A stretch of DNA of 64,000 bases from Setoptus koraiensis (GCA_048013815.1 CM106585.1:9858001-9922000); one strand, 5' to 3'. Shown: positions 777-21,490, counted from the first letter of the stretch. Made by a program: numbers and translations. The notes: generated from the sequence alone by a model not told the origin.

Positions 777-1017
777 AGTGAAATACAAAAGAAAATACGC
801 CCTACGCTGTTTAGCGACAGTACATTGTATAATGAGCGGTGAAATTGAATCCGGCTCCGAATCAAAATCGTCAGCTCCTTGAGATAACTAATAAAATTCG
901 TTTGGCGCCTAGGTAAACTCTTTGGGCATAATTTTTTCCTCAGGGAACATCCGACTTTTCCTGCTTCACAATCTAAATATTGCGCGCGCTTCTTCGGAAC
1001 TTTTATCGCATCGGCAA
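777..1017. repeat. ~240-bp direct repeat, copy A
   Basis: AGTGAAATACAAAAGAAAATACGC...CTTTTATCGCATCGGCAA recurs at 19090-19337 with scattered substitutions and a small indel. The flanks are unrelated. Confidence 0.9.
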
Positions 1018-2230
1018 CTTACTCTCCATTTTTGGTATCAACGTGGTGACACCTAGAATCGAGTCCGATGAACCAAAACACGTTCATCGCAAATTCTGTT
1101 TCTCTTTTGCTCATATTCATAGGTGATTAAAGATATACATCTGTCTTAAAATAACTGTAATATTGCGTGGATTCTTTCAGACTTGGCAGCGATCATTAGT
1201 TATCGTTGTCTTCCGCACTTGCTTTCACTTGCAAAAAGCAAGACAAAACATCTCAGTGATGATAACAACAGACAGTTGGAATATATCTATTCGAGGACAT
1301 TGATGTGTGATTCGCCAGTAAAATCACGTACAATCGGCGGAAGTTGTTATGAGGCTGACCCCAATAAGAGTAGGCACACGAAATCGAATAGGTTTGCGCT
1401 TGCTGCGGGAACAGGAGACACTTCATTCGCGCCTTTGCTCTGGCGATTCATCTCTCGTCGCTGAACGATGTCGATGCTTATCACAATCTTCCAATACTCG
1501 TAGCAACTCGATTTTGGGGAGCTCGTTTATTTGGATTGAGTCAGACATCGCAATGATCTCACTAGATACAATTGTCTTCCACGCTAGATTTCTCGAAATT
1601 CTTGTAGCAAAGAACAATCGGTGCGGCAGATCGGTGATGAAAACAAGAGACGATTGCTAACTATCGATCGAAGCACATTAATTGTCGATTAGGGAGGACA
1701 AACAGGCACGATTAGCAAAAATTGTTAAGGTTGTACCTCATTAAAACACAGACTGAATTGAATAGTTTGGCGCTTGCTATGGGAATAGTAGACACTTTCA
1801 TCGACACAGTGAATAAAATGCGAAAACAAAATCAAGTTCTCTCATTCGTGCCTTTGCTCTGATTCCTCGCGAGTCTTAATGACGTTCCCGAGTGCACTAT
1901 CTCCCGAGAGAGTTTTATGCAGAAGCAATCTGCCCCGAAAGGCGGGCGCATGCTCCCGCGCAGTGAGGCTCGATGCGTTCGGGATCTCGGTGAAAACTTA
2001 CACATCGCAAGGCTCTCACCCAGAAAAGAAAGTCCATTCACTCATTTCACATGAACCAGATCCCGTCGTATTTCCCTTCGCGCGCGTTCATTGCGAATTT
2101 CGCAATCCAAGAGTCTGGAGCAGCAAAGAATGTTAGAGCATGGTTGAAGCAATCCATCAAATAGCTCTAGCCAACAACAAATCGGAACGGATCAGTCAGT
2201 AAAATTATCTCAGGAGCAGCAAACGAAAAA

Positions 2231-4243
2231 ATGGATATCCCATCAGAATGGCGAGTGAGTATCTCATTACTAATCAGTTTCCAATGAAACTCTTTTCTGA
2301 ATCAATGAGGATTGATTATTCAGCAACTGTCATCCATTAACTTTTGCAGGCGCCCATGTTTGCCTTCACTGGCTTGTTATTTGTTGCCGCCGTCACAAGT
2401 AATATGATTGTTTGCCATACAGTATGGCGCGACAAAAGCATGCATACTGCAATATATTATTTCGTTGTCAATCAAGCAATAGGTGATCTACTCATGACAC
2501 TCCCTATACCAGCATATTTTATTACTGGTGATATTTCTGAGTACGAAGCGCAGATAATAGGCAACAAATTTTGTGCTTGTTATAGGTATCTTATTCTCAG
2601 TCCTATCTATGTCAGGTAAGTGTTTAGAAAATAATGAGATGCAATGTTTGTTTCGGGGTCTGGTGTGCATACGTGTAACCAATCATCCACTGTGTGATGA
2701 GCTAGCAGTCAAGTGCGGTGATAATTACAGCGAAACATACCTCGACAAACATAACATCGTAATTGGAAGTGTTGAAAGAGGAAGATCTATCATACAGATT
2801 GTATTATGTGTCCCATTAATCATATCAAGCACTTATACCATGGTGGCTATCGCAATAAACCGTTATCGAGCTATTGTCGATTTACGTATGACAGGACAAC
2901 CAAAGAAGATCATTGCAGCTATCTGGTTGTCAGCCTCTTTGATTTCATTGCCAGCTACCATTCATGCCGGCTTGCTACCGAACTACTATATAGGGCCTAT
3001 TATCTCTTATCACTGCTATGAGAGATGGAAATCGAAACAATGGCGCGAAATTTATTATTATGCGCTATCGGTCATACAATCTATAGGACCAATAATTGTG
3101 TTCGCCTTCACCTATACGAGGGTATCAATTGTTGTTTGGAAAAGACAGATACCTGGAGAGCCCGACAGTGCACACCATCTCATGATTGATCGTTCCAAAA
3201 TGAGGGTGAGTGATATTTGGTCATATCAAGTTTTAAATTACTCAAATATAACCCGTCCCACTCGGATTATCATGAATTTATTCTCGTCTTAGGATGATGT
3301 GAAATTACCATTTTTATTTATCCAAACCAATGTGTGTCCACGTGCGATAATCAGAGAGCTGTAAGAAAACAGCAAGTAACCGAAGGTGCACTGAAAAAAC
3401 CGAATGCACACGTTTCCATTCGGTGATATGATAACCCCACTGCCAGGCTTGTCGATAAACAGCATGAAATCGATAAAAACAAGTATAAACTGAACTCCAA
3501 AGACGAATTAGGTTGCGAGAATTCGTTTCGTTTATAGTTTGTTTCGATGGAGACAAGAGCACCAGCTATGTGAGATATAAACATATTGGCACTTAAATCC
3601 CAACGACATGCGGGTAAAGTTTTCGCACGATTATTTGAGATGACATTCTTGCATAGACCAAGCCGATGAGGTACCTCACAGAGCGTCGATCGAGATTCGT
3701 GTGGTGGAACCAACCAACCAAACCAATCAACCTTCAACTTTTATGAGCACAAGATCTGATATGACCCGATTGCGTTACAGTGTAAACTCTACTCACACAT
3801 ACAGCGTCAGAACTGCGGCAGATCGAAATGGTATTACTATACCGATAAAAAAACTCGTTGTCATTAATAACTAGTAACCACCATTCTTCATTTTCTTTGT
3901 ATTCACAAAACCACATTTTCCACGAATATATGATTAGACATTGAAAATGGCAATATATTGTTTTGGTGCCTTCGCTTTAACCTGGCTTCCATATCAGGTG
4001 TTTTTCTTTTTTTATAGCAATCACCACCCCATTATAGAGAATATGGAAGATAGGACAGTTTCTATCATATATTTTGTAATGACCTATCTCACTTGGTGCC
4101 ACACCATCACGAATCCAATAATTTATTATCTGATGGACGAAAAATTACGTCAGGGCTTTCGAAATGCAGTTAGCATGTTCAAACGTAAGAATGAGTCGAG
4201 CCAAGTCAACGAGCAGATCAAGCTCGATGACTCAGCTGTCTGA
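2231..4243 (+). CDS. Class-A GPCR, RYamide/NPY-receptor-like, copy 1 (323 aa, 4 exons)
   Basis: Exons 2231-2254, 2350-2615, 2830-3205 and 3938-4243 have GT..AG ends and keep frame (972 nt). Motifs: TM1 SN, TM2 GDLL, TM3 C...STYTMVAIAINRY, ECL2 Cys, IPGE..RSK, TWLP, NPIIY. Confidence 0.88.
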
Positions 4244-6300
4244 GAAGATGGCACATACGGGAAAAGTTGGTTCGCTACCAAGAGTTAGATTACATTTCGA
4301 GCCGGTTCGGTCAGTATGCGCGCGTAACCTACCAATGTCACACAAAACGGAAAATATCTGACGCGAACAAGCTTGTATCGATCGTGAGCAGAATACATCA
4401 CTTTCATTTGAACAATCGCAACCATATTTGGATTGACAGTACGTGTCTCATTTGATCCCCTATCTGCCGACATTTATTTTGGTGTAATCTGGCGGTTGAC
4501 ATTCATTGCCGAGTTGATGTCGTGCAAAATCGAGGCCGACTTTCTCTCACTCCGTAATAGACGACGAACATGAATTACACGAAATGTTCGCCAGCATAAA
4601 TAGAGCATAAGTGTCAAATTTTGCGTTCTCGCTTGCGTCATCACATTCAATAGACAGCCAATTTTTGACAGATTTAATCCAACGAGCTGAGTGAGTTGTT
4701 ATCTTGCTCGCTTGATGCTGGCCGAATGCATTCTCGGCCACTTTCGACCTGTGTAACTATATTTGGAGCTTGTGAGAACTACGGAAGCAAGCTTGATACA
4801 CGCTCAGTCTATTCCTCGTCGAAGAGCTCGCTCGTCGCTTCTGTCCCTGCATCGAGCGAGAATAAATGTTACCTCATTGTTATTCGGGAGATCTAAGGCC
4901 GCTAAATTTCTACTGGCAAATAGTATTATCTGTATTGACACCATAGCCTTCGTTGTACGCCAAACATGAGTATCAAAGACGAATCACCACAATATAAATG
5001 CCTGCCGATCAATCAACACATGACCGAACTCGGATAACAAGTAGCAAGAAGCAAATTCAAGAGCACAAAGCAACGCTTACACGATTTGACTTTTCGCAAT
5101 CAGAATCTCTTCTCTGTTGAGCACTCTTACCTGCGAATATTTATCGTTCTTTATGAGAGGCAACCTGATTGATTTGTGCATACGCTCCGAGGACCTAGAG
5201 CAGTTGTTCACCGGACGACTTTTGCTAGGAAGACCAACATTGGAAGATAAGAGACTGGAGATAAGACTGCAATCGTGTACTCTTGGTTGACCTCCAAGAA
5301 TGGATTCAGATATATCGACAACATCTAATAGGTTCCTCAGTTACTACATTGAATATGGTGCATCGTAAACTGTGTCATTGATTCTTGTCCGTCTCATTGT
5401 TGCTCACATTCGCATCATTCACTGACACATCTCGAATACTCACATATGGTCTGTAGCAGTAATTGTTCATAATGGCATTGCTGATGACAGTTATATTCAG
5501 TTAGATCCAACTAAAAGTAATACATTGAGTAGATCGGTTCAGACATGGCTGCAATCATCGCCATTTATGGTTGTCACCCGCAATGGCTCTCACCAATTCG
5601 TATCAACAACCAATTCGCAAGCTTACAAAAAAACAATCGGTGCGACAGCTCGACGATGAAGACAACAGACGGTTGCTATCTATCTATCAGTGCACAATAA
5701 TTGGCAATTAGGGAGTGCAAGCAGATACCACAGGCGAAAATTGTTATGAGGTGGAACCCCATGAAAACACCCACTGAATTGAAAAGTTTGGCGCTTGCTA
5801 TGGGAATAGGAGACACTTTCATCGACACAGTGAATAAAATGCGAAAACAAAATCAAGTTCTCTCATTCGTGCCTTTGCTCTGATTCCCCGCGAGTCTTAA
5901 TGACGTTCCCAAATGCATTGAATCCCGAGAGGGTTACAATCTAAACAAATTATGTTTCTCTGGCAGTACTCTGCCCCAAAAACAGGCGCATGCTCCATTT
6001 GTTGGCTATGTGCGTTCGAGATCTGGCTGAAAGCGTACACATCGCAAGTCTTTTATCCAGAAAAAAGTCCATTCACTTGTTTCCCCCTGATGAATGAATG
6101 ACAAAAAGAAACTGGGATGCATCGGGCTCTATCATGCGACCAGATCCAGATTTAGTTTCAGTTGCTCGCGTTCATTGCGAAATATGCCCAAGAGTCCGTA
6201 GCAGAAAAGCATGTTCGAGCATGGTTGAAGCAATCCATCAACTAGCCCTAGCCAACAACAAATCGGAACGGATCGGTCAGTAAAATTATCTCAGGAGCAG
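4210..6300. repeat. ~2.1-kb intergenic duplication unit
   Basis: Almost base-identical to 8070-10150 (offset ~3.86 kb). The 5' part also recurs at ~12170-12900. An upstream module recurs at ~1740-2220 and ~12950-13450, with degenerate traces at ~1250-1445 and ~16450-16530. Confidence 0.92.
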
Positions 6301-6311
6301 CAAACGAAAAA

Positions 6312-8107
6312 ATGGATATCCCATCAGAATGGCGAGTGAGTATCTCATTACTAATCAGTTTCCAATGTAACTCTTTTCTGAATCAATGAGGATTGATTAT
6401 TCAGCAACTGTCATCCATTAACTTTTGCAGGCGCCCATGTTTGCCTTCACTGGCTTGTTATTTGTTGCCGCCGTCACAAGTAATATGATTGTTTGCCATA
6501 CAGTATGGCGCGACAAAAGCATGCATACTGCAATATATTATTTCGTTGTCAATCTAGCACTGAGCGATCTACTCATCGCACTCATCACGATACCGGTATC
6601 TTTTTTTTCTCATGTGATATCTGAGTACCAAGCGTGGATATTCGGCAGAGCCTTTTGTGTTTTTTATTCGCATCTTTCAACCAGTTCTGTCTTTGTCAGG
6701 TGAGTATCAAGAGAAGAATACGCGCAGCGTCCTGGTGCCACTAACGATTCGTTCCATTCTGTGATGAGCTAGCAACCAAGATCGGCGAACATTGTAATTG
6801 ATAATAATGAAAAGTATAAAAAATCCGTCATACGGTTTGTGTTATGTGTCCTGTCAATCATATCAAGCACTTATACTATAGTGGCCATCGCAATAGACCG
6901 TTATCGGGGCATTGTAGATTCACGTAGGACAGGGAAACCTAAGCTGATCATTGCAGCTATCTGGTTGGCAGCCTCTTTGACTGCATTACCAGCTACCATT
7001 CATTCCGACTTGGTACCAATTCCCGACGACGAACTCGGATTATACTATTGCAATGAAAAATGGGAATCAGGAGAATGGCGCAAAATCTATACTTATGTAC
7101 TAACGGTCTTGCAATTTGTAGGACCACTAATTGTGATCGGAATCACTCATATTAAAGTATTAATCGTTGCTTGGAAAAGACAGATACCTGGTGAGCCCAA
7201 TAGCGCAAACCATCTCATTTGTGTTCGTTTCAAAGAGAAGGTAAGTGATATCTAGACAAATAGGCTGATGAGCCTTCTCAAAAGACCATGATCGAGATTC
7301 ATTCATCTCACAAGTTTTCAGGCAGTTTCTGCGGTCTTCCGGTGAGAAGTGGATTGGTTGTTCACTAAATTGTGTTTCTCTTCGTATTCACTAAACCACA
7401 TTTTTTACGACGATTTATCTAGGCACTTAGGATGGCGGTATATTGCTTCACAGCGTTCTCATTAACTTGGCTACCAAAAACCATGCTAAATTTCATGATT
7501 GAACAAAACCCTTCTATTCTGACCAAAGATGGGATACAATATGCTTATTTTGTTGCGAGCTATCTTTATNNNNNNNNNNNNNNNNNNNNNNNNNNNNNNN
7601 NNNNNNNNNNNNNNNNNNNNNNNNNNNNNNNNNNNNNNNNNNNNNNNNNNNNNNNNNNNNNNNNNNNNNNNNNNNNNNNNNNNNNNNNNNNNNNNNNNNN
7701 NNNNNNNNNNNNNNNNNNNNNNNNNNNNNNNNNNNNNNNNNNNNNNNNNNNNNNNNNNNNNNNNNNNNNNNNNNNNNNNNNNNNNNNNNNNNNNNNNNNN
7801 NNNNNNNNNNNNNNNNNNNNNNNNNNNNNNNNNNNNNNNNNNNNNNNNNNNNNNNNNNNNNNNNNNNNNNNNNNNNNNNNNNNNNNNNNNNNNNNNNNNN
7901 NNNNNNNNNNNNNNNNNNNNNNNNNNNNNNNNNNNNNNNNNNNNNNNNNNNNNNNNNNNNNNNNNNNNNNNNNNNNNNNNNNNNNNNNNNNNNNNNNNNN
8001 NNNNNNNNNNNNNNNNNNNNNNNNNNNNNNNNNNNNNNNNNNNNNNNNNNNNNNNNNNNNNNNNNNNNNAGCAGATCAATGTCAAGCTCGATGACTCAGC
8101 TGTCTGA
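6312..8107 (+). CDS. Class-A GPCR, RYamide/NPY-receptor-like, copy 2 (exon 4 interrupted by assembly gap)
   Basis: Exons 6312-6335, 6431-6699, 6868-7240 and 7423 into the gap. LALSDLL, DRY and TWLP are present. The post-gap QINVKLDDSAV* (ends 8107) may belong to this copy or to another. Confidence 0.8.
7570..8069. other. Assembly gap (500 N)
   Basis: Run of exactly 500 N. Confidence 0.99.
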
Positions 8108-10150
8108 GAAGATGGCACATACGGGAAAAGTTGGTTCGCTACCAAGAGTTAGATTACATTTCGAGCCGGTTCGGTCAGTATGCGCGCGTAACCTACCAAT
8201 GTCTCACAAAACGGAAAATATCTGACGCGAACAAGCTTGTATCGATCGTGAGCAGAATACATCACTTTCATTTGAACAATCGCAACCATATTTGGATTGA
8301 CAGTACGTGTCTCATTTGATCCCCTATCTGCCGACATATATTTTGGTGTAATCTGGCGGTTGACATTCATTGCCGAGTTGATGTCGTGCAAAATCGAGGC
8401 CGACTCTCTCTCTCACTCCGTAATAGACGACGAACATGAATTACACGAAATGTTCGCCAGCATAAATAGAGCATAAGTGTCAAATTTTGCGTTCTCGCTT
8501 GCGTCATCACATTCAATAGACAGCCAATTTTTGACAGATTTAATCCAACGAGCTGAGTGAGTTGTTATCTTGCTCGCTTGATGCTGGCCGAATGCATTCT
8601 CGGCCACTTTCGACCTGTGTAACTATATTTGGAGCTTGTGAGAACTACGGAAGCAAGCTTGATACACGCTCAGTCTATTCCTCGTCGAAGAGCTCGCTCG
8701 TCGCTTCTGTCCCTGCATCGAGCGAGAATAAATGTTACCTTATTGTTATTCGGGAGATCTAAGGCCGCTAAATTTCTACTGGCAAATAGTATTATCTGTA
8801 TTGACACCATAGCCTTCGTTGTACGCCAAACATGAGTATCAAAGACGAATCACCACAATATAAATGCCTGCCGATCAATCAACACATGACCGAACTCGGA
8901 TAACAAGTAGCAAGAAGCAAATTCAAGAGCACAAAGCAACGCTTACACGATTTGACTTTTCGCAATCAGAATCTCTTCTCTGTTGAGCACTCTTACCTGC
9001 GAATATTTATCGTTCTTTATGAGAGGCAACCTGATTGTTTCGTGCATACGCTCCGAGGACCTAGAGCAGTTGTTCACCGGACGACTTTTGCTAGGAAGAC
9101 CAACATTGGAAGATAAGAGACTGGAGATAAGACTGCAATCGTGTACTCTTGGTTGACCTCCAAGAATGGATTCAGATATATCGACAACATCTAATAGGTT
9201 CCTCAGTTACTACATTGAATATGGTGCATCGTAAACTGTGTCATTGATTCTTGTCCGTCTCATTGTTGCTCACATTCGCATCATTCACTGACACATCTCG
9301 AATACTCACATATGGTCTGTAGCAGTAATTGTTCATAATGGCATTGCTGATGACAGTTATATTCAGTTAGATCCAACTAAAAGTAATACATTGAGTAGAT
9401 CGGTTCAGACATGGCTGCAATCATCGCCATTTATGGTTGTCACCCGCAATGGCTCTCACCAATTCGTATCAACAACCAATTCGCAAGCTTACAAAAAAAC
9501 AATCGGTGCGACAGCTCGACGATGAAGACAACAGACGGTTGCTATCTATCTATCAGTGCACAATAATTGGCAATTAGGGAGTGCAAGCAGATACCACAGG
9601 CGAAAATTGTTATGAGGTGGAACCCCATGAAAACACCCACTGAATTGAATAGTTTGGCGCTTGCTACGGGAATAGGAGACACTTTCATCGACACAGTGAA
9701 TAAAATGCGAAAACAAAATCAAGTTCTCTCATTCGTGCCTTTGCTCTGATTCCCCGCGAGTCCTAATGACGTTCCCAAATGCATTGAATCCCGAGAGGGT
9801 TACAATCTAAACAAATTATGTTTCTCTGGCAGTACTCTGCCCCAAAAACAGGCGCATGCTCCATTTGTAGGCTATGTGCGTTCGAGATCTGGCTGAAAGC
9901 GTACACATCGCAAGTCTTTTATCCAGAAAAAAGTCCATTCACTTGTTTCCCCCTGATGAATGGATGACAAAAAGAAGCCGGGATGCATCGGGCTCTATCA
10001 TGCGACCAGATCCAGATTTAGTTTCAGTCGCTCGCGTTCATTGCGAAATATGCCCAAGAGTCCGTAGCAGAAAAGCATGTTCGAGCATGGTTGAAGCAAT
10101 CCATCAACTAGCCCTAGCCAACAACGAATCAAAACGGATCGGTCAGTGAA
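8070..10150. repeat. ~2.1-kb intergenic duplication unit, second copy
   Basis: Near-identical to 4210-6300. Confidence 0.92.
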
Positions 10151-10171
10151 ATTATCTAAGTAGCAGCAAAA

Positions 10172-12197
10172 ATGAATATTCCATCAGAATGGCGAGTGAG
10201 TATCTCATTACTAATCAGTTTCAAATAAAAAACTTTTCCGAGTCAATGAGGATGGATTAATCAGCAACCTTCATCCATTAACTCTTGCAGGAACTCATGT
10301 ATGCTTCCACTGGCTTGTTATTTGTTGCCAGTGTCGCAAGTAACTTCATCGTTTGTTATACAGTTTTGTGTGACAGAAGCATGCATACTGCAACATATTA
10401 TTTCGTCGTCAATCTTGCACTGAGCGATCTACTCATGACACTTTCTATACCAGCATATTTTATTGTTGATGGAATTTCTGAGTACGAAAGGCAGATAATA
10501 GGCGACAAGTTTTGTGCTTTTTATAGGCATCTTAATCTCAGTCCTATCTTTGTCAGGTAAGTGTTTAGGAAATAATGACATGCAAAGTTTGTTTCGGGAT
10601 CTGGTGTGCATACGTGTAACTTCCTATGATCGCCAACCAATCATCCCACTGTGTAATGAGCTAGCAGTCAAGTGCGGTGATAATTAAAGCGAAACATACC
10701 TCGACAAACATAACATAGTAACTAGAAGTATTGAAAGAGAAAGATCTATCATACTGATTGTATTATGTGTCATAATAATCACATCAAGCACTTATACCAT
10801 GGTGGCTATCGCAATAGACCGTTATCGGGCCATTGTAGATTCACGTAGGACAGAACAACCAAAGCAGAGCATTGCAGCTATCTGGGTGGCAGCCTCTTTG
10901 ACTGCATTACCAACAACCATTCATGCCGCCTTGAAACAGAAATTCAAGATGGATATGGAGGGTAATTTCGTTTATGGATGCGATGACGTTTGGGAATCGG
11001 AACGATGGCTAAAAATTTATTATTATGCGCTAATCTTCTTGCAACTTATCGGACCAATAATTGTGTTCGCCATTACCTATACGAGTGTATCAATTGTTGT
11101 TTGGAAAAGACAGATACCTGGAGAGCCCGACAGTGCACACCATCTCATGACTGCTCGTTCCAAAATGAAGGTGAGTGATATTTAGTCATATCAAGTTTTG
11201 AATTGCTCAAATATATAACCCGTCCCACTCGGGTTATCATGAATTTATTCTCGTCTTAGGATGATTTGAAAGAACAGTTTTTTATTTATCCAAATCAATG
11301 TGTGTGCATGTGTGATAATCAGAGAACTGTAAGAAAACAGCAAGTAACCGAAGGTGCACTCGAAAAACCGAATGCACACGTTTCCGTTCGGTGATATGAT
11401 AACCCCACTGCCAGTCTTGTCGATATACAGCATGAAATCAATAAAAACAAGTATAAACTGAACTCCAAAGACGAATTAGGTTGTGAGAATTCGTTTCGTT
11501 TATAGTTTGTTTCGATGGAGATAAGAGCGTCAGATGAGCTATGTGAGATCTAAACAAATAGGCAGCTAAATCCCAACGACATGCGGGTAAAGTTTTCGCA
11601 CGATCATCTGAGATGACATTCTTGCGTAGACCAAGCCGATGAGGCACCTCGAGAAGAACGTCGATCGAGATTCGTGTGGTGGAACCAACCAACCAAACCA
11701 ATCAACCTTCAACTTTCATGTGCAGAAGATCTGACTTGATCCGATTGGTTTACACATACATACAGCGCCAGAAATGCGGCAAATCGAAATGATATTACTA
11801 TACCAAAAAAATAGTTGTCATTAATAACTAGTAACCACCATTATACATTTTCTTTGTATTCACAAAACCACATTTTTCACGAATATATGATTAGACATTG
11901 AAAATGGCAATATATTGTTTTGTGGCCTTCGCTTTAACTTGGTGTGCAACTCATGTGTTTCATATTTTGCTTATCGATCAGGATCTCATTACGGAAATTA
12001 GGACAATTTTTATTACAAATTTTGTATTGACCTATCTCACTTGGTGCCACACCATCACAAATCCAATAATTTATTATCTGATGGACGAAAAATTACGTCA
12101 GGGCTTTCGAAATGCATTTAGCATGTCCAAATGTAAGAATGAGTCGAGCCAAGTCAACGACCAGATCAATGTCGAGCTCGATGACGCAGCTGTCTGA
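10172..12197 (+). CDS. Class-A GPCR, RYamide/NPY-receptor-like, copy 3 (324 aa)
   Basis: Exons 10172-10195, 10291-10556, 10789-11170 and 11895-12197 (975 nt, frame kept). DRY and NPIIY are present. TM6 reads TWCAT instead of TWLP. Confidence 0.88.
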
Positions 12198-13603
12198 GAG
12201 GACGGCACATACGGGAAATGTTGGTTCGCTACCAAGAGTTAGATTACACTTCGAGCCGGTTCGGTCAGTATGCGCGCGTAACCTACCAATGTCACACAAA
12301 ACGGAAAATATCCGACGCAAACAAGATTGTATCGATCGTGAGCAGAATACATCACTTTCATTGGCACAATCGCCACCATGTTTGGATTGTCAGTACGCGT
12401 CTCATTTGATCCCCTATCGGCTGACATTTATTTTGGTGTAATCTGGCGGTTGACATTCATTGCCGAGTTGATGTCGTGCAAAATCGAGGCCGACTTTCTC
12501 TCACTCCGTAATAGACGACGAACATGAATTACACGAAATGTTCGCCAGCATAAATAGAGCATAAGTGTCAAATTTTGCGTTCTCGCTTGCGTCATCACAT
12601 TCAATAGACAGCCAATTTTTGACAGATTTAATCCAACGAGCTGAGTGAGTTGTTATCTTGCTCGCTTGATGCTGGCCGAATGCATTCTCGGCCACTTTCG
12701 ACCTGTGTAACTATATTTGGAGCTTGTGGGAACTACGAAAACAAGCTTGATACACGCTCAGTCTGTTCCTCTGTGTTCTGTTGCCCGTCGAAGAGCTCGC
12801 TCGTCGCTTCTGTACCTGTATCGAGCGAGAATAAATGTTACCTCATTGTTATTCGGCAGATCTGAGGCCGTTAAATTTCTACTGAAAACAGTAGTATTAG
12901 GGAGTACAAGCAGATACCATAGGCGAAAATTGTTATGAGGTGGGATCCCATTAAAACACACACTGAATTGAATAGGTTTGTGCTTTCTGCGGAATTGGAG
13001 ACACTCTTATCGACACATTGAATAAAATGCGAAAACAAAATCTATTTCTCTCAATCGTGCTTTTGCTCTGATTCCCCGTGAGTCTTAATGACGTCCCAAA
13101 GGGGATTGTCTCCCAAGAGGATTGTACTCCGAATGAATTCTGTTTTTCCAGCAGTAATCTGCACCGAAAGGCGGGCGCATGCTCCCGCGCAGTGAGGCTC
13201 GATGCGTTCGAGATCCGGTGAAAACGGATTGCGAAGCTCTCATCCAGAAAAAATCAATTCCTTTATTTTCTCTCGACAAATAAATGACATACAGAAGCTG
13301 GGAAGCATTTTATTGTGTTTCTGAAAAAAATCAGATCCAGTCTTATTTTCTTAGGCGCGCATTCATTTCGAAATATTCCGAAAAGTTTGGAGCAACAAAA
13401 AATCTTGGTGCATGGTTAAAGCAATCCATCAATTAGCATGAGCCAATCTGGGTGATAAAGTACACATTGCGAGGCTCTAATATAGAAAATTAAAAGTAAA
13501 TCGACTTATTCTCCGCTTATTTACTGATATCAATTGATCAGTTTGATTGACTAACGATCGGTCAACGTTCACTAAAATGTCCTGACGAGCAGCGAACGAA
13601 AAA

Positions 13604-15196
13604 ATGAAGGTCTCATCAGAGGTGTTGGTGAGTATCTTGATAGTAATCATTTTTCGATAATTCTCTTTCTGGATTCGATAAGTATCGATTAATCAGCAAC
13701 TGCAATCCATTGACTTCCGCAGGCCCTCATGTATGCCTTCACTGGCTTCTTATTTATTGCCAGTGTAACAAGTAACCTCATCATTTGCCATACAGTATTG
13801 TCGGACAAAAGCATGCATACTACAACATATTATTTTGTTGTCAATCTAGCAATCAGCGATCTTCTCATAGGACTAATTACTTTACCACTAACATTCGTCA
13901 CTAGTAGTGTTATTTCTGAGTACGAAGAATGGATATTTGGCAACACCTTTTGTGTTTGTTTTTGGCATCTAGCAACCAACTCTATGTTTGTAAGGTGAGT
14001 ATTCAGAAAAGAATGATTATTAGCGGTTGTTTTGCCGTCAAAAATTCGTCCCATCGCGTGATAATCTAGCAATCATGTGTGATGACAACGACAGCGAAAC
14101 TTGTCGACTCACACAACATCCTGATTAAAAGTAATGAAGAATGATAAAAAATCTCTCATACTGTTTGTATTATGTGTATTAATAATATCAAGCACTTATA
14201 CTATAGTGGCCATCGCAATAGACCGTTATCGGGCTATAGTAGATTTACGTATAACAGGGCGACAACCTAACAAGTCTTGTAAGTCTATCATTACAGCTAT
14301 CTGGTCGGCAGCATTTTTGACTACAATTCCGGCAACCATTCATGCTGGCTTGAAACCAATACCGGACACTAATGGATCATTCAGTTGCAGTCAGAACTGG
14401 AAATCGGAGGAATGGTATATGATTCACTTTTATGCATTATTGGTCTTACAATTTATTGTACCCCTAATTGTGCTCGCCATCACTCATGCGAGAGTTGTAA
14501 TTAAAGTTTGGAGAAGACGAATACCGGGCGAGCCCGATCGAGCAAATGATCTCATGAGCATCCGTTCCAAAAGAAAGGTGAGTAATATCTAAACTAATAC
14601 GCGCGTCGCCAAATAGCACAACAAGTTTCGTTGATACAAACCCTATAGACGATCCCAGTTTTGAAATAGAATAAAACATGCATATACTTTGAGCGAATTA
14701 TGGTTCGAGCTCAATTTGGTTGAAGCAAACGGTAGGCATCCCTAGGATAAGCGTAACACTCAACTTGACTCGATTCATTCATTCATACATGTAACATAGA
14801 AACCGGAGCGAATTAATATTATATCACTATGCCAACCAAAAGCCTGGTGTCATAATGAATAACCAGTAACCAGTATTCTACCGTTTCGTTATATTCACAA
14901 AACCACATTTCTCACGGCTATTCGATTAGACATTAAGAATGGCGATATATTGTTTTGCAGCGTTCGTGTTAACCTGGCTCCCATTACATGTGATACACTA
15001 CAAGATGGAACACAACCCTTCCCTTTTGAAGGAAGATTGGATCAAATATGCTCATTTCATTGGGCACTCTATTGCCTGGTGCCACACCATCACGAATCCA
15101 ATAATTTATTATCTTATGGACAAAAAGCTACGCAGGGGCTTTCGAGATACGTTTAGTATGTCCAAATGTAGGAACGAGTGCATCATCTGTCCATAG
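13604..15196 (+). CDS. Class-A GPCR, RYamide/NPY-receptor-like, copy 4 (315 aa)
   Basis: Exons 13604-13627, 13723-13994, 14193-14577 and 14930-15196 (948 nt). LAISDLL, DRY, TWLP and NPIIY are present. Confidence 0.88.
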
Positions 15197-17057
15197 ACAT
15201 CTAAACCAAGTCTGGTACCTATGGGTTAGCTGATAAACGGAGAAGAAAGACATGCACCCTACTGTTGTGCAGTGTATATTAATATTTACATCAGTCCTAT
15301 CTAGATTCTGTGAACAGGAGGTCAAATCCGGCTCTCGAGTGCGAAGCATTTTTGGGATGACACAATGGAGAGGACAGCCGGAAAGAAACTAGGAAGGAGA
15401 ATTCAACGGACTTCCTCTGGATAAGAAAGACGTTTACTTGAGCTGCTGGCGCTGACAAGATCAAGATTGGCAGACGAGATTAGTGATGATCAAGATCGGC
15501 TTGAGGTGATATCTTTAATAGCTTTGTTACAGTAATGATGATGTTGAATTGGTGGAAAACTCCGAGAAGCTCGAGTATCTCTGCGCAATACAACCATAAC
15601 GATTGCGCTGAGATTTGAGCGTTCTCTATCATTCGATGCTAAAAGTTAGCAAGTACTGCTAGATGCGTTCTGATGATGTGGCTCAATACTGTCGGCCGAT
15701 ATGAATAGTCGGTACGCTTTTCATGAGCTGTGGAGAGAATGTGGAGCGAATGGGCACTACATAAAGAATACCAAGTCCAACGTGAAAGACTGCCGATCAT
15801 GATCTCGTATTTTCATGAGATGCTATTACCACATCACTGGCATACTCAAAGCTGGCAATAGTGGCAGTAGGTAGCACCGTATATGCCAAGGTCAATGTCA
15901 AACTCGATGATATGCTGCTTGGGGCTACCATCAGATATCGTGAGACATTTCGAAGATTGCCACTGCTAAAAGTCTAATCTCGGACCAGCATTATCGATAA
16001 GTCCGAGCACGCAAAACTGACCCACCATGAGTTTAATTATATTCCGGATCAGCATCATCGGACAGCGTATGCCGCCTAACCGACCAAAGTCATACACATC
16101 TGAAGATATCCGACGCAAGCAAGCTTGTAACGGTCAAGAGCAGAATACACCACTTTCATCTGCACAGTCGACACCACGGATAAATTGACAGTACAGGCTC
16201 AGTGATCCTCTCATTAGCGCGCTTCCTTTGGTCCCCTATCTGCTGCGGCATTCACAGTAATCTATCTTTCGAAGTACTGTTGGCAATGGTCTATAGTACA
16301 CTCGACTTACTGAAGACACAAACCTCCTTGGGTTGCACTCAGACCCAAGAGAAAATTGGGCTCTCGGATCGGATAAACCGAGAAACAGTAGGGAGAGACA
16401 TTCTTTTACCAAACATTTTCACTATACGTCAGATAATTGGTCAATTCTTGCGGTAGAACACCACAGTGCAGGACATTCTTCTAAGTAGGCGCATGCTCTA
16501 TTTGTAGGACGCCAATTTTGTCAGCGTTTTCTCTGTGATCTGGCTGTTTACGCTCGAATCGTTCAGCTTTTGTCACGAAGATACGAAGCCAACTTTCTGC
16601 GTTTCAGAATAGACGGCGAAAGTATGTTTCACGCTGTGCTAACCGGCATACATAAACTACTGAAGACACAGACTTACAGCTGTTTTTGGCCCATAAGAGA
16701 GAGGCTCAATTTATCTCTGACACGTGTGCAATGTATCTTATTAAGAATCTAAATGGGCCTCACTCGGCTTCTGCTTGCCCTCAGGCCCTCTATTTCTTGG
16801 TGGCCTACAGACCCCAAAGTATACACCTTTAAGAGTGTCAAAATGTTCAAGTTTCCGGAGAATGTCGAATATAGTGATAACAAAGCCAAAGCATGCCATG
16901 TATCCGGGTTATCCAACCATGTGAGAAAACGCTCAAGTGATCGATTGCAGCCCGATCAATTAATATCATGAATTATTTAATCAAGCAGCCTTAATTGTCT
17001 AGAAAATATTGTTGAAGGGGCCATCGATAGTTTTCGACCGAGAACATCTATCGAGAA

Positions 17058-18934
17058 ATGGATGTAGTGTATCGAACGGAGGCATTGGTGAGTATCTTGC
17101 TATAGTATATTCTCGAATACCTCTACGTTTATTTAACAATTTATTTGTAACTCTAATTCTATTGATTTTCATAGGTTCTCATGTATGTCGTCACCGGTTT
17201 TTTATTTGTTACCAGCATCACAAGTAATCTCATAGTTTGCCATACAGTATTGTCTGATAAAAAACTGCACACTGCAACCAATTATTTCATTGTAAATCTA
17301 GCATTCGGCGACATACTCTTAGGACTAATTAATATACCAGCTTCTTTTGTTAGTTATGCAATTATTTACAAACGCTCAATAATCGGTTACAACATGTGTG
17401 TTTGGATCTCGTATCTCGGAACTAATTCTGTCTTCGTCAGGTGAGTAATCGTGGTTATCGTGAATGAGATGAGTCTTGCTGTCGTTGTTCGCGGCTAATG
17501 TCATCACGAGCCATTTCATTGTGATGATGAAATCTGGCAAGTGCCCTCAACTAAAATATTGTTAGTAAAAATAGAGATCGTCTCCCATGGAGGAGAAAGT
17601 TACACACAACTCTATCAATAATAACAAATCTACCATGTTCATTCTTATGTGTTTTGTGTTAAGCACCTACACAATGATGGCCATATCTATTGACCGATAC
17701 AGGGCCATTGTGTGTCCCATGCGTCCACATTTGACTCTACGACAGTCCACGATGATCATTGCAGCAATTTGGATAGCGGCCTTCGTGACTACTTTCCCAT
17801 CATCCATTCATTCTGGCCACCTTGCCTCAGATCTAAATGATATATACTCATGCTATGAGGAGTGGAAATCAGAAGAGTGGCGCAAAATTTATTATTATGC
17901 GCTATTGATCTTGCAATTTATAGTGCCACTCATTGTGTTGGTGATCACTTTCGCTAGAGTCTGGTTAACTGTTAGGAACAACCAAAAGCCTGGCGAATCC
18001 GAGAATGAAAGGGCAGAAGAGATGCGGGCTCGTTCGAAGAGAAAGGTGAGTGGGATGGAATACGATAACAATGTTTCATCACTCTATAAATTAATCATGA
18101 ATTAATTCAATTCGATTTCCATTTATGGGAGAATAGTTTTCCTAGTGTTTCGTTGGTGCAATCCTCGAACCCTTCTTTCTTGATATAATGGGGATATACT
18201 ACGCGAACACGTTTTATTTCCGGTTAGAGAAAATTCGCTAATTTGGGCTTGTCAGTGTCTTTCTTTAAATCATTGTTTTCGCTCAAAATCTTCAAGATTC
18301 TCTCATTTTTTTTATTTTACTCGAAGGACTTGAGGAATTCACGGAAGAAAATGGAGATTTCGGGCGTCTCAAATCCCAAGATCTTGGGCCAAAACGGCTC
18401 TTACGAATGGTCGCATGCTCAATCAAAGCAGGTTGCGTCTCTTATAGATTTGGCGCATTGTTTGCTTCAAATGGTCTTGCCTGCGCAAAACACAAATACA
18501 GTCGAAACAAATACGAACCGAATTCCAACTACGATCCAATGATGACTCAATAAAAATTCGAAAAGTTAACCCTTATGAATTTCACCATTTCTTTCTGCAA
18601 ATGAAAACTACTGACTAATTGCTATTCTTTTACGCCCTTTCATCTTCTTTTCACAACTCATCGTATTCCACGACTCTTCAAATAGACGCTTCAAATGGCG
18701 ATATATTGTTTTACAGCGTTCGTATTTACTTGGCTTCCATTTAATGTATATATCACTATGAGGGAAAACGACCCTACCATAAACAACATCAAAAGACTTG
18801 AATATGTTTGGATCGTTGTACACTATATTGCATTGTGTCACACCATCACAAATCCAATAATTTATTATTTGATGCACGAAAAATTACGCCACGGCTTCCA
18901 GAATGCATTTAACATGCTCAGATGTGGGAACTAA
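17058..18934 (+). CDS. Class-A GPCR, RYamide/NPY-receptor-like, copy 5, the most canonical (308 aa)
   Basis: Exons 17058-17087, 17175-17440, 17664-18045 and 18686-18934 (927 nt). HTATNYFIVNLAFGDIL, AISIDRYRAIVCPMRP, KPGE...RSKRK, WLPFN and NPIIY match my recollection of arthropod RYamide receptors. Confidence 0.9.
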
Positions 18935-19089: not shown

Positions 19090-19337
19090 AGTGAAATACA
19101 AAAGAAAATACGCTCAACGCTGTCTAGTGACAGTACATTGTATAATGATCAGTGAAAATAAATCCGGCTCCGAATCGAAATCGTCAACGCCTTGAGATAA
19201 CCAATAAAATTCGTTTGGCACCAAGGTAAACTCTTTGGGCATAATTTTTTCCTCAGGGAACACCGAACATCCGACTTTTCCTGCTTCACAATCTATATAT
19301 AGCGCGTGCTTCTTCGGAACTTTTATCGCATCGGCAA
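19090..19337. repeat. ~240-bp direct repeat, copy B
   Basis: Matches 777-1017. Confidence 0.9.
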
Positions 19338-20179: not shown

Positions 20180-21490
20180 TCACATAGTTTTATTTAGAGA
20201 CGGTAATGAGATTGCATCAAATTTAGTCGACTTTCCTATAAGCTTCCAGTTATAGGCTGATATTTGATTAATCGAAATAACAATTGTTATGATCATTACA
20301 TTAAGATTTATGAGTCGCCTGATATTTGGTTTTAGCCAATTCGTTGGCCCAATGCGGCAGATATCCTTGACAAGACGTCTCAATCGAAGAATTTCATTCT
20401 TTTTCATGAGCTCGTTCAATGTATTCGGCATTCGCTTTAAGTAAACATCTGTTGATCCCAGATAATGATTGTCCTCTGATAGATGCAACAACAGTCGAGA
20501 ATTCTCGTGAATCCTTCGGTATCCGTCAATTGTCATTAACATTTGAGCCATTGGAGAGGAGTAGTTCAACAGCAGGCATATCAAAACACTATGTTTTCTT
20601 GTCCTAATTGCATCTATGATAGTGAAGAAGCGTCTTAGCATGAATAATGCTAGATGCAAAAAAGTTACAAAGCAAGGTAGACTGATCTGTTCTCTGATCA
20701 ATAGCATCACATCTCGAATTTGCACAATTGTATCCAGAATGACTTCCACAGGTAGCCTATCCCTCCTAGCTATCAATAGAGCTATTCGATCCGACATGGA
20801 CAATGTTATTCTATAGGTTATGTAATGTATTGAGATCATGTGACAAGCTATTACATGGGCATCAGGTACCATTAACAATGCTTCGAAAAAAGATTGTCGT
20901 TCAATAATATAACTAAGAAAGAACCTAACACACACAACAGCGACCCATGTATAAATAAAATAGCCATAATCCCTTGTGAATTCTCTGAAACTACTAATAA
21001 AGTTTCTGAAAATACATCTATTTATACTGCTCGCTATTTGCTCACTATGAAACAGAGCTGATATATCGCCGCCGTCATTCTTGTTCAAGATTAAATCGAA
21101 GTAATGATACTTCAATACTCCTGGCACAAATGTTGCCACATTGACCACAATAAAAGAAATGTTTGGAACGAAAACCAGAAAGAAATATCGAATTTGACCT
21201 ATTCCATAAGAGCTCATGAATGAGCTTAAATATGAACTTGGCAGCTTAAGTCCATGCCCGTACATATAGACATATATGGCATATCCCGAAATGAATAATC
21301 GTTGAATGGTGTTGATCACTAGCGAATTGGTTAATTTGAGTGAACCTGTTAGCCTTAATATCAATTCGATCCAATAGATGCGATCTTTCAATGTTCTCCG
21401 TCCTCGTTCATTTGCGCTTGTTTTAAAATCAATAGAAACTTCAAGTCTTCTTTCTGGATATTCACAATCTCGAAATTTGCGAATTGCCAT
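20180..21490 (-). CDS. Intronless multi-pass membrane protein, gustatory-receptor (7TM chemoreceptor)-like, 436 aa
   Basis: Long ATG-initiated ORF with ~6-7 hydrophobic segments. Size and a C-terminal basic loop followed by a last TM (KPNIRRLINLNVMIITIVISINQ) fit the GR layout. No diagnostic motif is certain. Confidence 0.55.
   Translation of the reverse strand: MAIRKFRDCEYPERRLEVSIDFKTSANERGRRTLKDRIYWIELILRLTGSLKLTNSLVINTIQRLFISGYAIYVYMYGHGLKLPSSYLSSFMSSYGIGQIRYFFLVFVPNISFIVVNVATFVPGVLKYHYFDLILNKNDGGDISALFHSEQIASSINRCIFRNFISSFREFTRDYGYFIYTWVAVVCVRFFLSYIIERQSFFEALLMVPDAHVIACHMISIHYITYRITLSMSDRIALLIARRDRLPVEVILDTIVQIRDVMLLIREQISLPCFVTFLHLALFMLRRFFTIIDAIRTRKHSVLICLLLNYSSPMAQMLMTIDGYRRIHENSRLLLHLSEDNHYLGSTDVYLKRMPNTLNELMKKNEILRLRRLVKDICRIGPTNWLKPNIRRLINLNVMIITIVISINQISAYNWKLIGKSTKFDAISLPSLNKTM

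What the first reader, a model, noticed from the sequence alone, without database searches (positions are those of the whole stretch)
2231..18934. Tandem array of rapidly diverging RYamide-receptor-like GPCRs with almost no N-terminus: possible co-option as chemosensors
Seen: five genes with identical intron phases (0, 2, 0), an 8-10-codon first exon, and TM1 starting about 10 residues in. The signalling-side motifs (DRY, IPGE, NPIIY) and the TM3-ECL2 disulfide are kept. ECL1, ECL2, ECL3 and the outer TM3/TM6/TM7 differ strongly; the ECL2 reads LLPNYYIGPIISYHC, LVPIPDDELGLYYC, LKQKFKMDMEGNFVYGC, LKPIPDTNGSFSC and HLASDLNDIYSC. Known: arthropod neuropeptide receptors are usually single-copy and conserved, whereas tandem birth-and-death with variable pockets typifies chemoreceptors, and vertebrate TAAR and FPR chemoreceptors arose from class-A GPCRs. 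Inference: this is a lineage-specific receptor family sensing new ligands. A GR-like gene lies 1.2 kb away.
Basis: partly seen in the sequence, partly recalled or inferred. Interest (0 to 1): 0.8.

Follow-up and report, generated by a model that had tools for sequence, protein, structure and literature searches.

The report
Diverging tandem RYamide-receptor-like GPCR array
Five neighbouring genes, plus one dead remnant, encode fast-evolving copies of an arthropod neuropeptide (RYamide/luqin-type) receptor that keep the signalling side but have each rewritten the ligand pocket; a role in smell or taste is possible but has no direct evidence.

Summary
Five + strand, four-exon class-A GPCR genes lie at 2231-18934. 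Their intron phases are 0, 2, 0, the first exon has 8-10 codons, and the quoted ECL2 strings are exact.

G1 has NRY instead of DRY. G3 has lost P6.50. G2's exon 4 is cut by the gap. Contig ends from four public runs continue the reading frame into both sides of the gap. By homology about 118 nt are unread, which would keep the frame, but no record bridges it.

Trees place the five as one clade nested inside arthropod RYamide receptors. Their sister is a gene from another organism with the same 10-codon first exon.

The near-absent N-terminus is not special. RYamide-receptor models of Panonychus, Brevipalpus and Oppia have it too.

The inner half is under purifying selection (omega 0.39). The outer half is near neutral (0.77). 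Q3.32, invariant in the canonical receptors compared, is I, S, N, A or G here.

Between G1 and G3, ECL2 and TM6-ECL3 are 4-5 times more diverged than the introns. Gene conversion is active in the array. An exon-3 relic lies at about 23.1 kb.

Chemosensory co-option is untested, because no RNA run holding the genes was found. I rate this a new variant of a known kind, of moderate interest.

The parts
2231..4243 (+). G1: 4-exon GPCR gene, 323 aa. Has NRY in place of DRY. Ends in LDDSAV.
   Evidence: Exons 2231-2254, 2350-2615, 2830-3205, 3938-4243 with GT-AG introns of phases 0, 2, 0. Pfam 7tm_1 on each long exon.
6312..8107 (+). G2: 4-exon GPCR gene whose exon 4 is interrupted by the assembly gap at 7570-8069.
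   Evidence: Exons 6312-6335, 6431-6699, 6868-7240, 7423-7569, then 8070-8107. Contig ends continue in frame on both sides of the gap. The expected unread length is 118 nt.
10172..12197 (+). G3: 4-exon GPCR gene, 324 aa. P6.50 is lost (LTWCA). Ends in LDDAAV.
   Evidence: Exons 10172-10195, 10291-10556, 10789-11170, 11895-12197. Its ECL2 sequence appears as loose contig ends in run X3.
13604..15196 (+). G4: 4-exon GPCR gene, 315 aa.
   Evidence: Exons 13604-13627, 13723-13994, 14193-14577, 14930-15196.
17058..18934 (+). G5: 4-exon GPCR gene, 308 aa. It is the earliest-branching copy and the closest to canonical RYamide receptors (40% identity to an Anthophora RYamide receptor).
   Evidence: Exons 17058-17087, 17175-17440, 17664-18045, 18686-18934. 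BLASTP. Trees.
2962..3092 (+). Hyperdivergent patch A of the G1/G3 pair, covering ECL2 and the outer end of TM5. The G3 counterpart is at about 10921-11057.
   Evidence: K=0.37 (38 of 131 sites) against K=0.086 in introns and 0.083 in the remaining exon sequence. The alignment is shown. This patch is equally divergent in all ten pairs of copies.
3982..4072 (+). Hyperdivergent patch B of the G1/G3 pair, covering outer TM6, ECL3 and outer TM7. The G3 counterpart is at about 11939-12023.
   Evidence: K=0.46 (28 of 82 sites). Both patches together against introns: Fisher p=1.2e-16.
2195..2490 (+). Gene-conversion tract. The G1 5' end (exon 1, intron 1 and the first half of exon 2) is 99-100% identical to G2 at 6276-6570.
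   Evidence: Sliding identity of the aligned units. Repeat family D1.
4206..6275 (+). Spacer between G1 and G2. It is nearly identical to the spacer between G2 and G3 (8070-10141).
   Evidence: 29 differences in 2072 aligned columns. Ten of these come from a 6-nt indel at the left end. Depths of public contigs do not show the 2:1 ratio expected for two copies.
8070..10141 (+). The G2 3' end and the G2-G3 spacer, starting directly after the gap. Its copy number and exact sequence are not independently verified.
   Evidence: Variants specific to this copy (8204T, 8338A) are seen only in runs of sample S1.
23040..23350 (+). Relic of a sixth copy. It matches the exon 3 region (TM4-ECL2-TM5) and carries in-frame stops and W4.50C.
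   Evidence: tblastn at 33-39% identity to G2, G4 and G5, E down to 1e-7, with a stop inside the alignment.
20180..21490 (-). Neighbouring intronless 436-aa gene that looks like a gustatory receptor. It lies between G5 and the relic.
   Evidence: ESM Atlas features score 0.96 to 'Gustatory receptor' and 7tm_7 clusters. No Pfam hit. Only two unnamed homologs were found.

Best explanation
This is a birth-and-death tandem array: five intact-looking genes, one of them cut by an assembly gap, plus one dead relic. They belong to a divergent subfamily of the arthropod RYamide/luqin-type neuropeptide receptor.

Shown:
- The proteins are 7TM class-A receptors.
- They keep the inner, G-protein-facing machinery under purifying selection. 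This includes N1.50, D2.50, [D/N]RY, W4.50, P5.50, the family-typical ICL3 motif PGE...SK+K, W6.48, NPIIY and helix 8.
- The outward-facing half evolves close to neutrally on average. It has lost residues that are invariant in the canonical RYamide receptors compared here (Q3.32, H7.39, the WPFG of ECL1).
- Each copy has a different ECL2, a different residue at 3.32 and a different TM6-ECL3-TM7 rim.
- The array is reshaped by non-allelic gene conversion or unequal crossing-over. Spacers, introns and the G1/G2 5' ends are homogenised.
- Two short outward-facing segments stay, or have become, 4-5 times more diverged than the introns around them.

Inferred:
- Each copy binds a different ligand in the TM3/5/6/7-ECL2 pocket and signals through a G protein.
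- Selection maintains or drives the pocket differences against homogenisation.
- The ligands are unknown. They could be diversified peptides or something new.
For: Gene models and motifs.

Family placement:
- The best full-length relatives are named RYamide receptors, at 30-40% identity.
- The careful ML tree gives the window clade support 100/98, and the same with the other-organism gene L001p.
- Both lie inside the arthropod RYamide-receptor clade (95/92). Tachykinin-like, PrRP-like, SIFamide and leucokinin receptors fall outside.
- Intron positions and the tiny exon 1 are shared with L001.

Selection:
- Nei-Gojobori dN/dS is higher in the outer half than in the inner half in 9 of the 10 pairs.
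- ML omega is 0.39 for the inner half (different from 1, p=1.5e-10) and 0.77 for the outer half (p=0.052).
- Invariant columns: 29/148 outer against 61/144 inner, p=2.7e-5.

Pocket:
- Q3.32 is Q in every one of the 117 canonical receptors aligned and is I, S, N, A or G here.
- H7.39 is T, S, T, H, H.

Patches in the G1/G3 pair: introns K=0.086, non-patch exon 0.083, ECL2 patch 0.37, TM6-ECL3 patch 0.46, p=1e-16.

Conversion tracts.

Relic of a sixth copy.
Against: - No transcription evidence. No RNA run holding the genes was found.
- Overall omega of 0.58 is high for a neuropeptide receptor.
- G1 (NRY) and G3 (no P6.50) may be impaired.
- About 35-40% of canonically conserved inner-half positions are also changed. 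Part of the divergence is therefore general, not pocket-specific.
- The codon analyses assume one tree, but conversion makes the genes mosaics.
- Synonymous differences are also raised inside the patches (pS about 0.29 on few sites). Patch divergence could therefore come from conversion by unseen paralogs rather than from point substitutions under positive selection.
- The G2-G3 spacer and G2's 3' end are not independently verified.
- Whether the genome also keeps a canonical RYamide receptor is unknown.
Confidence: 0.72

Rival explanations
1. Chemosensory co-option. The copies are expressed in peripheral sensory neurons of the legs, palps or mouthparts. They detect external small molecules or peptides. 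This would parallel nematode SRW, vertebrate TAAR and vomeronasal FPR receptors.
For: - Tandem birth-and-death, with copy-specific ECL2 and pocket residues and a near-neutral outer half.
- Loss of the canonical peptide-pocket residues Q3.32 and H7.39.
- Precedent: the nematode Srw chemoreceptor family is related to rhodopsin-type peptide receptors (PMC3963977).
- GPCR-based chemoreception has been proposed, without proof, for ticks and mites (PMC5536051, PMC12193088).
- A GR-like gene sits inside the array.
Against: - No expression data of any kind.
- Only five or six copies are seen, a small number for a chemoreceptor repertoire.
- The same pattern fits peptide receptors co-evolving with duplicated peptide ligands.
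- The missing N-terminus is shared with canonical mite RYamide receptors, so it is no sign of a new ligand class.
- Other first-stage notes report several GR-like arrays in this genome, so adjacency to one is weak evidence.
Confidence: 0.15
2. Redundant duplicates drifting towards loss. After duplication the copies are under relaxed constraint. The variable loops are simply the least constrained parts, and conversion is blocked wherever divergence and indels have already accumulated.
For: - High overall omega (0.58), and an outer half not distinguishable from neutral (p=0.052).
- NRY in G1, P6.50 lost in G3, and Y5.58 replaced in G2, G4 and G5.
- A dead relic nearby.
- No RNA evidence.
Against: - All five reading frames and all fifteen splice-site pairs are intact.
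- Inner-half omega is 0.39, with p=1.5e-10 against neutrality.
- Clade-specific motifs such as TSNxIVCH, STYT, TWLP and WCHTITNPIIYY are conserved across the copies. The first two are also present in the partial gene of the other organism, whose contig ends before TM6.
- Neutral drift cannot make two exon segments 4-5 times more diverged than the adjacent introns.
Confidence: 0.1
3. The copy number is partly an assembly artefact. The scaffold join at the gap strings together repeat copies or haplotypes, so G1-G3 represent fewer real loci, or the G2-G3 spacer is a pasted copy of the G1-G2 spacer.
For: - The gap sits exactly where G1, G2 and G3 become near-identical.
- The 2.07 kb after the gap differs from 4206-6275 at only 29 columns.
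- At 8273-8308, public contigs show the window's letters at the same or lower depth than the G3-downstream letters. Two copies would give twice the depth.
- Variants specific to the post-gap copy appear only in runs of one sample.
Against: - G1, G2 and G3 gene bodies are 62-72% identical in protein, far too different to be alleles.
- G2-specific contigs are present at single-copy depth in all four runs laid.
- A 2,033-nt contig of X4 joins the spacer to the G2-specific sequence.
- G1- and G3-specific sequences appear as loose ends in X6 and X3.
- Logan contig depths are a poor measure of copy number.
Confidence: 0.1

Closest known systems
RYamide receptor (Drosophila RYa-R, and the bilaterian luqin/RYamide-type receptor family)
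   Same: - The window genes nest inside the arthropod clade of this family.
- They share the ICL3 signature W+..PGE...SK+K and the phase-0 intron right after it. They also share the phase-2 intron in TM3, the class-A microswitches and the TM3-ECL2 disulfide.
- The short N-terminus is shared with Panonychus, Brevipalpus and Oppia receptor models.
   Different: - Identity to canonical receptors is only 30-40%. Canonical orthologs stay 45-63% identical from sea spider to fly, brachiopod and annelid.
- Q3.32, H7.39, C6.47 and the WPFG of ECL1 are replaced, and differently in each copy.
- There are five tandem copies with omega about 0.6.
- The C-terminal tail is short.
Nematode SRW chemoreceptor family
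   Same: It is a lineage-specific expansion derived from rhodopsin-type peptide receptors (PMC3963977). Tandem clusters and fast-evolving outer parts are a resemblance I draw from general knowledge of the family.
   Different: SRW has many tens of members and documented expression in sensory neurons. Here there are five or six copies and no expression data. The two expansions have no direct common origin.
Vertebrate TAAR and vomeronasal FPR chemoreceptors
   Same: Class-A receptors of internal ligands that duplicated in tandem and changed pocket residues to sense external cues. This is my own knowledge, used as an analogy only.
   Different: They arose from aminergic and immune receptors. Their co-option rests on expression in olfactory or vomeronasal neurons, which is missing here.
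Tachykinin-type receptors (NK1R, NK3R)
   Same: They are the best solved-structure matches to exon 3 (E=8e-10 to 1e-8). They form the paralogous sister family of luqin/RYamide-type receptors (PMC7041311).
   Different: Tachykinin-like receptors fall outside the clade that holds the window genes.
Concerted evolution with selection-protected segments, as in the primate red/green opsin genes
   Same: Introns and flanks are homogenised by gene conversion while short functionally decisive exon segments stay different. The opsin comparison is from my own knowledge.
   Different: Here the protected or accelerated segments are whole loops with indels, not a few spectral-tuning sites. Their function is unknown.

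Membership tests
Rhodopsin-family (class A) GPCR | A 7TM fold that matches Pfam 7tm_1 and carries N1.50, D2.50, the E/DRY region, W4.50, P5.50, CWxP and NPxxY | tested here: met
   7tm_1 hits on exons 2, 3 and 4 cover profile positions 2-260. The motifs are visible. Exceptions are NRY in G1, TWLP in place of CWLP in G1, G2, G4 and G5, and TWCA in G3.
Luqin/RYamide-type receptor | Phylogenetic placement inside the clade, apart from tachykinin, PrRP, SIFamide and leucokinin receptors | tested here: met
   In the careful IQ-TREE tree the window clade sits inside arthropod RYamide receptors (95/92) and protostome luqin/RYamide receptors (92/84). The labelled outgroups fall outside. The quick tree of 117 rows agrees.
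Luqin/RYamide-type receptor | Family-typical ICL3 motif (PGE...SKRK) and conserved intron positions | tested here: met
   P, G, E and the SK.K core are kept, apart from FK in G2. The intron falls directly after this motif in the window genes, in L001 and, as read-through ORFs, in other relatives.
Luqin/RYamide-type receptor | Pocket residues invariant in the canonical members compared (Q3.32, H7.39, W7.40, WPFG in ECL1, N6.52) | tested here: not met
   Q3.32 is I, S, N, A, G. H7.39 is T, S, T, H, H. The ECL1 W is kept only in G2 and G4. N6.52 is Q, T, H, H, N.
Luqin/RYamide-type receptor | Activation by RYamide or luqin peptides | not testable with these tools
   This needs a cell-based assay with the species' own peptides.
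Chemosensory GPCR family (in the sense of SRW, TAAR or vomeronasal FPR) | Expression in chemosensory neurons or organs | not testable with these tools
   No RNA run holding the genes was found, and the single read-laying run was used on the gap.
Chemosensory GPCR family (in the sense of SRW, TAAR or vomeronasal FPR) | Lineage-specific tandem birth-and-death with diversified pocket residues | tested here: met
   Five monophyletic tandem copies and one relic. Outer-half omega 0.77 against inner-half 0.39. Copy-specific ECL2 and residue 3.32. The family is small.
Chemosensory GPCR family (in the sense of SRW, TAAR or vomeronasal FPR) | Response to external chemical cues | not testable with these tools
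   This needs deorphanisation.

The most novel reading that the evidence does not exclude
An arthropod, probably a mite, has turned a neuropeptide receptor (RYamide type) into a small family of metabotropic chemoreceptors or xenobiotic sensors. The ligand-contact cassettes (ECL2 and the TM6-ECL3-TM7 rim) are kept different by selection while gene conversion homogenises everything else. That would be a GPCR-based chemosensory system in a phylum thought to rely on ionotropic GR, IR and OR receptors.
Probability: 0.15. Interest if true: 0.85.

Novelty: new variant of a known kind. Interest (0 to 1): 0.55.

Why it matters
Across bilaterians, RYamide/luqin receptors are among the more conserved peptide receptors. 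A clade that has multiplied locally, dropped the family's invariant pocket residues and given each copy a different pocket is a natural experiment in how a peptide GPCR changes ligand.

The G1/G3 pair is especially useful. Its introns and most of its exon sequence differ by about 8%, yet two outward-facing segments differ by 37-46%. That contrast points to the determinants of specificity without needing a structure.

Whether Acari use GPCRs for chemoreception is an open and disputed question. If the copies are expressed in sensory appendages, they would be concrete candidates. If they are neuronal or gut receptors, they instead indicate a diversified RYamide-like signalling system. Either outcome can be tested with tissue RNA-seq and a standard deorphanisation assay.

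Tried and rejected
- Full-length searches were not possible. The spliced window proteins cannot be given by reference, and I did not type them in. I used a profile of the five exon-3 translations and the protein ids it returned.
- The window's own proteins are absent from the protein libraries. The best hit scored 122 bits.
- Naming the organism failed. The intronless ABCA gene has only unnamed Logan relatives at 36-39% identity and chelicerate ABCA3-like proteins at 31-34%. The GR-like gene has two unnamed hits. The Logan contig totals (56-75 million letters) suggest a small genome. I can say only 'probably a chelicerate, likely a mite'.
- The closest relatives of the window clade (P0002/L001, P0005, P0042, P0050 and others) carry no names. 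L002 shows a single gene, not an array.
- The RNA search found only runs that hold about 80% of the words, introns and spacers included. Those are DNA runs. Transcription therefore stays untested.
- Contig depth was tried as a measure of spacer copy number and rejected as unreliable. X1 and X6 come from the same sample yet disagree.
- A single unequal crossover (P, chimera, Q) would explain the two identical spacers. I rejected it as the full history because the middle of G2 is only 70-80% identical to both G1 and G3.
- No donor for the G1 or G3 patches exists among the window copies.
- A structure prediction to map the variable sites was not run, for the same reference problem.
- Searches of the scan's own notes for further GPCR arrays of this type in the genome found none.

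Full report
**What is there**

ORF listing and splice-site reading give five + strand genes of four exons each. The coordinates are in the parts list. All fifteen introns are GT-AG with phases 0, 2, 0.

Exon 1 has 8 codons in G1-G4 and 10 in G5. Every ATG has an in-frame stop 15-63 nt upstream and a conserved A-rich context. TM1 therefore starts about ten residues in, and N1.50 is residue 26-28.

Each long exon matches Pfam 7tm_1, together covering profile positions 2-260. I made four small corrections:
- G1 has NRY.
- G5 has KPGE.
- G3 has lost P6.50 (LTWCA).
- Y5.58 is H in G2 and G4 and F in G5.

**The gap**

The only N run is at 7570-8069, inside exon 4 of G2.
- The 147 nt from 7423 to 7569 are exactly 49 codons.
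- Logan contigs of four public DNA runs each extend 29 nt past 7569. They read WCHTITNPII in frame. That string is identical to G1 4094-4122.
- A contig of X6 extends 73 nt before 8070 and encodes the C-tail ...RKNESSQVN.
- In G1 the corresponding stretch is 118 nt. With that length G2 closes in frame on the stop at 8105-8107, ending ...QINVKLDDSAV.
- The written 500 N, which are 2 mod 3 rather than 1, create the apparent frameshift.
- The contigs break there because the sequence becomes identical among copies.
- No record bridges the gap, so continuity is likely, not shown.

**A caveat on the assembly**

The 2.07 kb after the gap (8070-10141) differs from the G1-G2 spacer (4206-6275) at only 29 aligned columns.
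- At the positions that separate this spacer type from the G3-downstream type (8273-8308), public contigs show the window's letters at equal or lower depth than the other type. They do not show twice the depth.
- Variants specific to the post-gap copy appear only in runs of one sample.
- Depths of Logan contigs are unreliable. X1 and X6 come from one sample and still disagree.
- I therefore record the spacer's copy number as unverified.

The gene bodies themselves are not in doubt.
- G2-specific contigs occur in all four runs at single-copy depth.
- A 2,033-nt contig joins the spacer to G2-specific sequence.
- G1- and G3-specific sequences appear as loose ends.
- At 62-72% protein identity they cannot be alleles.

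**What family**

Exon 3 matches solved tachykinin, PrRP and orexin receptors best.

I ran an exhaustive profile search with the five exon-3 translations. It found no close relative; the best hit scored 122 bits.
- The best full-length relatives are 30-40% identical, and G5 is the closest.
- They are named RYamide receptor, or RYamide- or NPY-receptor-like, in bees, a damselfly, a sea spider, Lingula and a priapulid.

Canonical RYamide receptors are far better conserved. The sea-spider protein is 45-63% identical to those of spiders, ticks, mites, insects, a brachiopod and annelids.

A 117-row quick tree and a 59-row careful tree agree.
- The five genes are monophyletic (100/98). Their branching order, (G5,(G4,(G2,(G1,G3)))), broadly follows their order on the DNA.
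- Their sister (100/98) is a gene on a 2.5-kb Logan contig of another organism (L001).
- The next group is a set of unnamed mite-like ORFs with long ECL2 inserts (100/99).
- All of these lie inside the arthropod RYamide-receptor clade (95/92).
- Tachykinin-like, PrRP-like, SIFamide, leucokinin and prokineticin-like receptors lie outside (labels).
- This fits the literature, in which luqin/RYamide-type receptors are the sister family of tachykinin-type receptors (PMC7041311).

The alignment shows the family's ICL3 signature, W+..PGE...SK+K, followed by the phase-0 intron.

First, the missing N-terminus is not peculiar to this array.
- N1.50 is at residue 25 in the Panonychus citri model, 23 in Brevipalpus and 21 or 34 in Oppia.
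- It is at 41-126 in ticks, spiders, horseshoe crabs, myriapods, crustaceans and insects.
- These are automatic gene models, but three genera agree.

Second, the architecture is older than this genome. L001 has a 10-codon exon 1 (MALKALPLVW, followed by GTGAGTATCTT) and the same phase-2 and phase-0 intron positions. It also shares the clade motifs TSNIIVCHT and STYT, while still keeping the canonical YWPFG in ECL1.

**How the copies differ**

Selection on the two halves:
- Pairwise Nei-Gojobori dN/dS is 0.28-0.92 overall. It is higher in the outward-facing half than in the inner half in 9 of the 10 pairs. G1/G3 give 1.23 for the outer half against 0.59 for the inner.
- ML omega on the fixed tree is 0.58 overall.
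- For the inner half it is 0.39, different from 1 at p=1.5e-10.
- For the outer half it is 0.77, p=0.052.
- Invariant columns number 29/148 in the outer half and 61/144 in the inner half, p=2.7e-5. ECL3 and outer TM7 have none, while inner TM7 has 11 of 11.

Comparison with canonical receptors:
- 110 positions conserved at 90% or more in 117 canonical receptors can be aligned to the window copies.
- The four complete copies retain 47-62% of the outer positions and 61-68% of the inner ones. Divergence is therefore general, only somewhat stronger outside.
- Strikingly, Q3.32 is Q in all 117 canonical sequences and is I, S, N, A and G in the five copies.
- H7.39 is T, S, T, H, H.
- The ECL1 W survives only in G2 and G4.
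- New clade-wide motifs (TSNxIVCH, STYT, TWLP, WCHTITNPIIYY, D in helix 8) show the family has its own constraints.

**The most informative pattern is in the youngest pair, G1 and G3**

From 2493 onward the two units align throughout.

| Segment | K |
|---|---|
| Introns (928 sites) | 0.086 |
| Downstream spacer | 0.040 |
| Exon sequence outside the patches | 0.083 |
| Patch A, ECL2 plus outer TM5 (2962-3092) | 0.37, with indels |
| Patch B, outer TM6-ECL3-outer TM7 (3982-4072) | 0.46, with indels |

- The patches against the introns give Fisher p=1.2e-16.
- The only other low-identity windows in those 2.4 kb are intron or spacer indels.
- In patch A all ten pairs of copies are equally different (41-58% aa). 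G1/G3 are no closer there than G1/G5, although elsewhere they are 80% against 52% identical.
- No window copy is a donor for these patches.

Conversion is clearly active.
- G1's exon 1, intron 1 and first half of exon 2 are 99-100% identical to G2's. From 2493 onward G1 follows G3. This agrees with the separate first-stage note s1-314326.
- The two spacers are near-identical.

There are two possible histories. In one, most of G1/G3 was homogenised or recently duplicated and the patches were protected. In the other, the patches changed very fast or were imported from unseen paralogs.
- Synonymous differences are also raised in the patches (pS about 0.29, few sites). That leans towards old or imported sequence.
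- The numbers are too small to decide.
- Under either history, finding both patches exactly on the ligand-entry surface is hard to explain without selection on what the pocket binds.

**Birth and death**

A sixth, dead copy survives as an exon-3 relic at about 23,040-23,350. It is 33-39% identical to G2, G4 and G5 and has in-frame stops and W4.50C. The intronless GR-like gene (20180-21490, minus strand) lies between G5 and this relic. It is GR-like by ESM features only (0.96) and has no Pfam match.

**Function**

What is shown is a set of receptors with a preserved signalling side and individually rewritten pockets. What they bind and where they are expressed is unknown.
- The RNA search returned only genomic runs.
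- The chemosensory idea has precedents. Srw is related to rhodopsin-type peptide receptors (PMC3963977). TAAR and FPR are further precedents, from my own knowledge.
- The idea touches an open debate on GPCR-based chemoreception in Acari (PMC5536051, PMC12193088).
- The same sequence pattern fits receptors tracking diversified peptide ligands equally well.
- I give co-option about 15%.

**Verdict**

This is a real, well-delimited feature. It is a new, divergent and locally expanded variant of a known receptor family, and it carries an unusually clear cassette-like pattern of pocket divergence. Interest is moderate. It would be high only if sensory expression or non-peptide ligands were shown.

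Noticed in passing
window 777-1017 and 19090-19337: A direct repeat of about 240 nt at 90% identity brackets the whole GPCR array. It could be a transposable-element fragment or the footprint of the segment that was duplicated.
   Followed up: no
window 4229-4243 (G1), 8093-8107 (G2), 12183-12197 (G3): G1, G2 and G3 end in ...LDDSAV or ...LDDAAV. This resembles a class I PDZ-binding C-terminus (x-S/T-x-V in G1 and G2). G4 and G5 lack it. The priapulid relative P0064 also ends in ...LSAV.
   Followed up: no
window 4930-5627 and 8796-9493: About 700 nt of the G1-G2 and G2-G3 spacers have no counterpart in the G3-G4 spacer. This may be an inserted element carried along by the spacer duplication.
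   Followed up: no
window 51244-55308 (-) and 32378-36448 (-): Two ABCA-like transporters of about 1,355 aa lie in single open reading frames. Full-length relatives are only unnamed Logan ORFs at 36-39% identity. Named chelicerate ABCA3-like proteins cover only about 43% of the query. This fits the separate first-stage note on minimal ABCA transporters.
   Followed up: partly
P0151 (Galendromus occidentalis LOC100897503, 772 aa): This public gene model looks like two tandem PrRP-receptor-like GPCRs fused into one protein. The first half starts directly in TM1.
   Followed up: partly
P0005, P0042, P0050; L002 9956-10993: The unnamed sister group of RYamide-receptor-like ORFs carries ECL2 insertions of about 100-130 residues. 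These are low-complexity and Ser/Thr/Gln-rich, and sit in a single open exon before the conserved ECL2 Cys.
   Followed up: no
L001 157-1007: Upstream of the sister GPCR gene, the Logan contig carries ORFs that look like fragments of a transposase or another mobile-element protein. No Pfam hit is on record for them.
   Followed up: no
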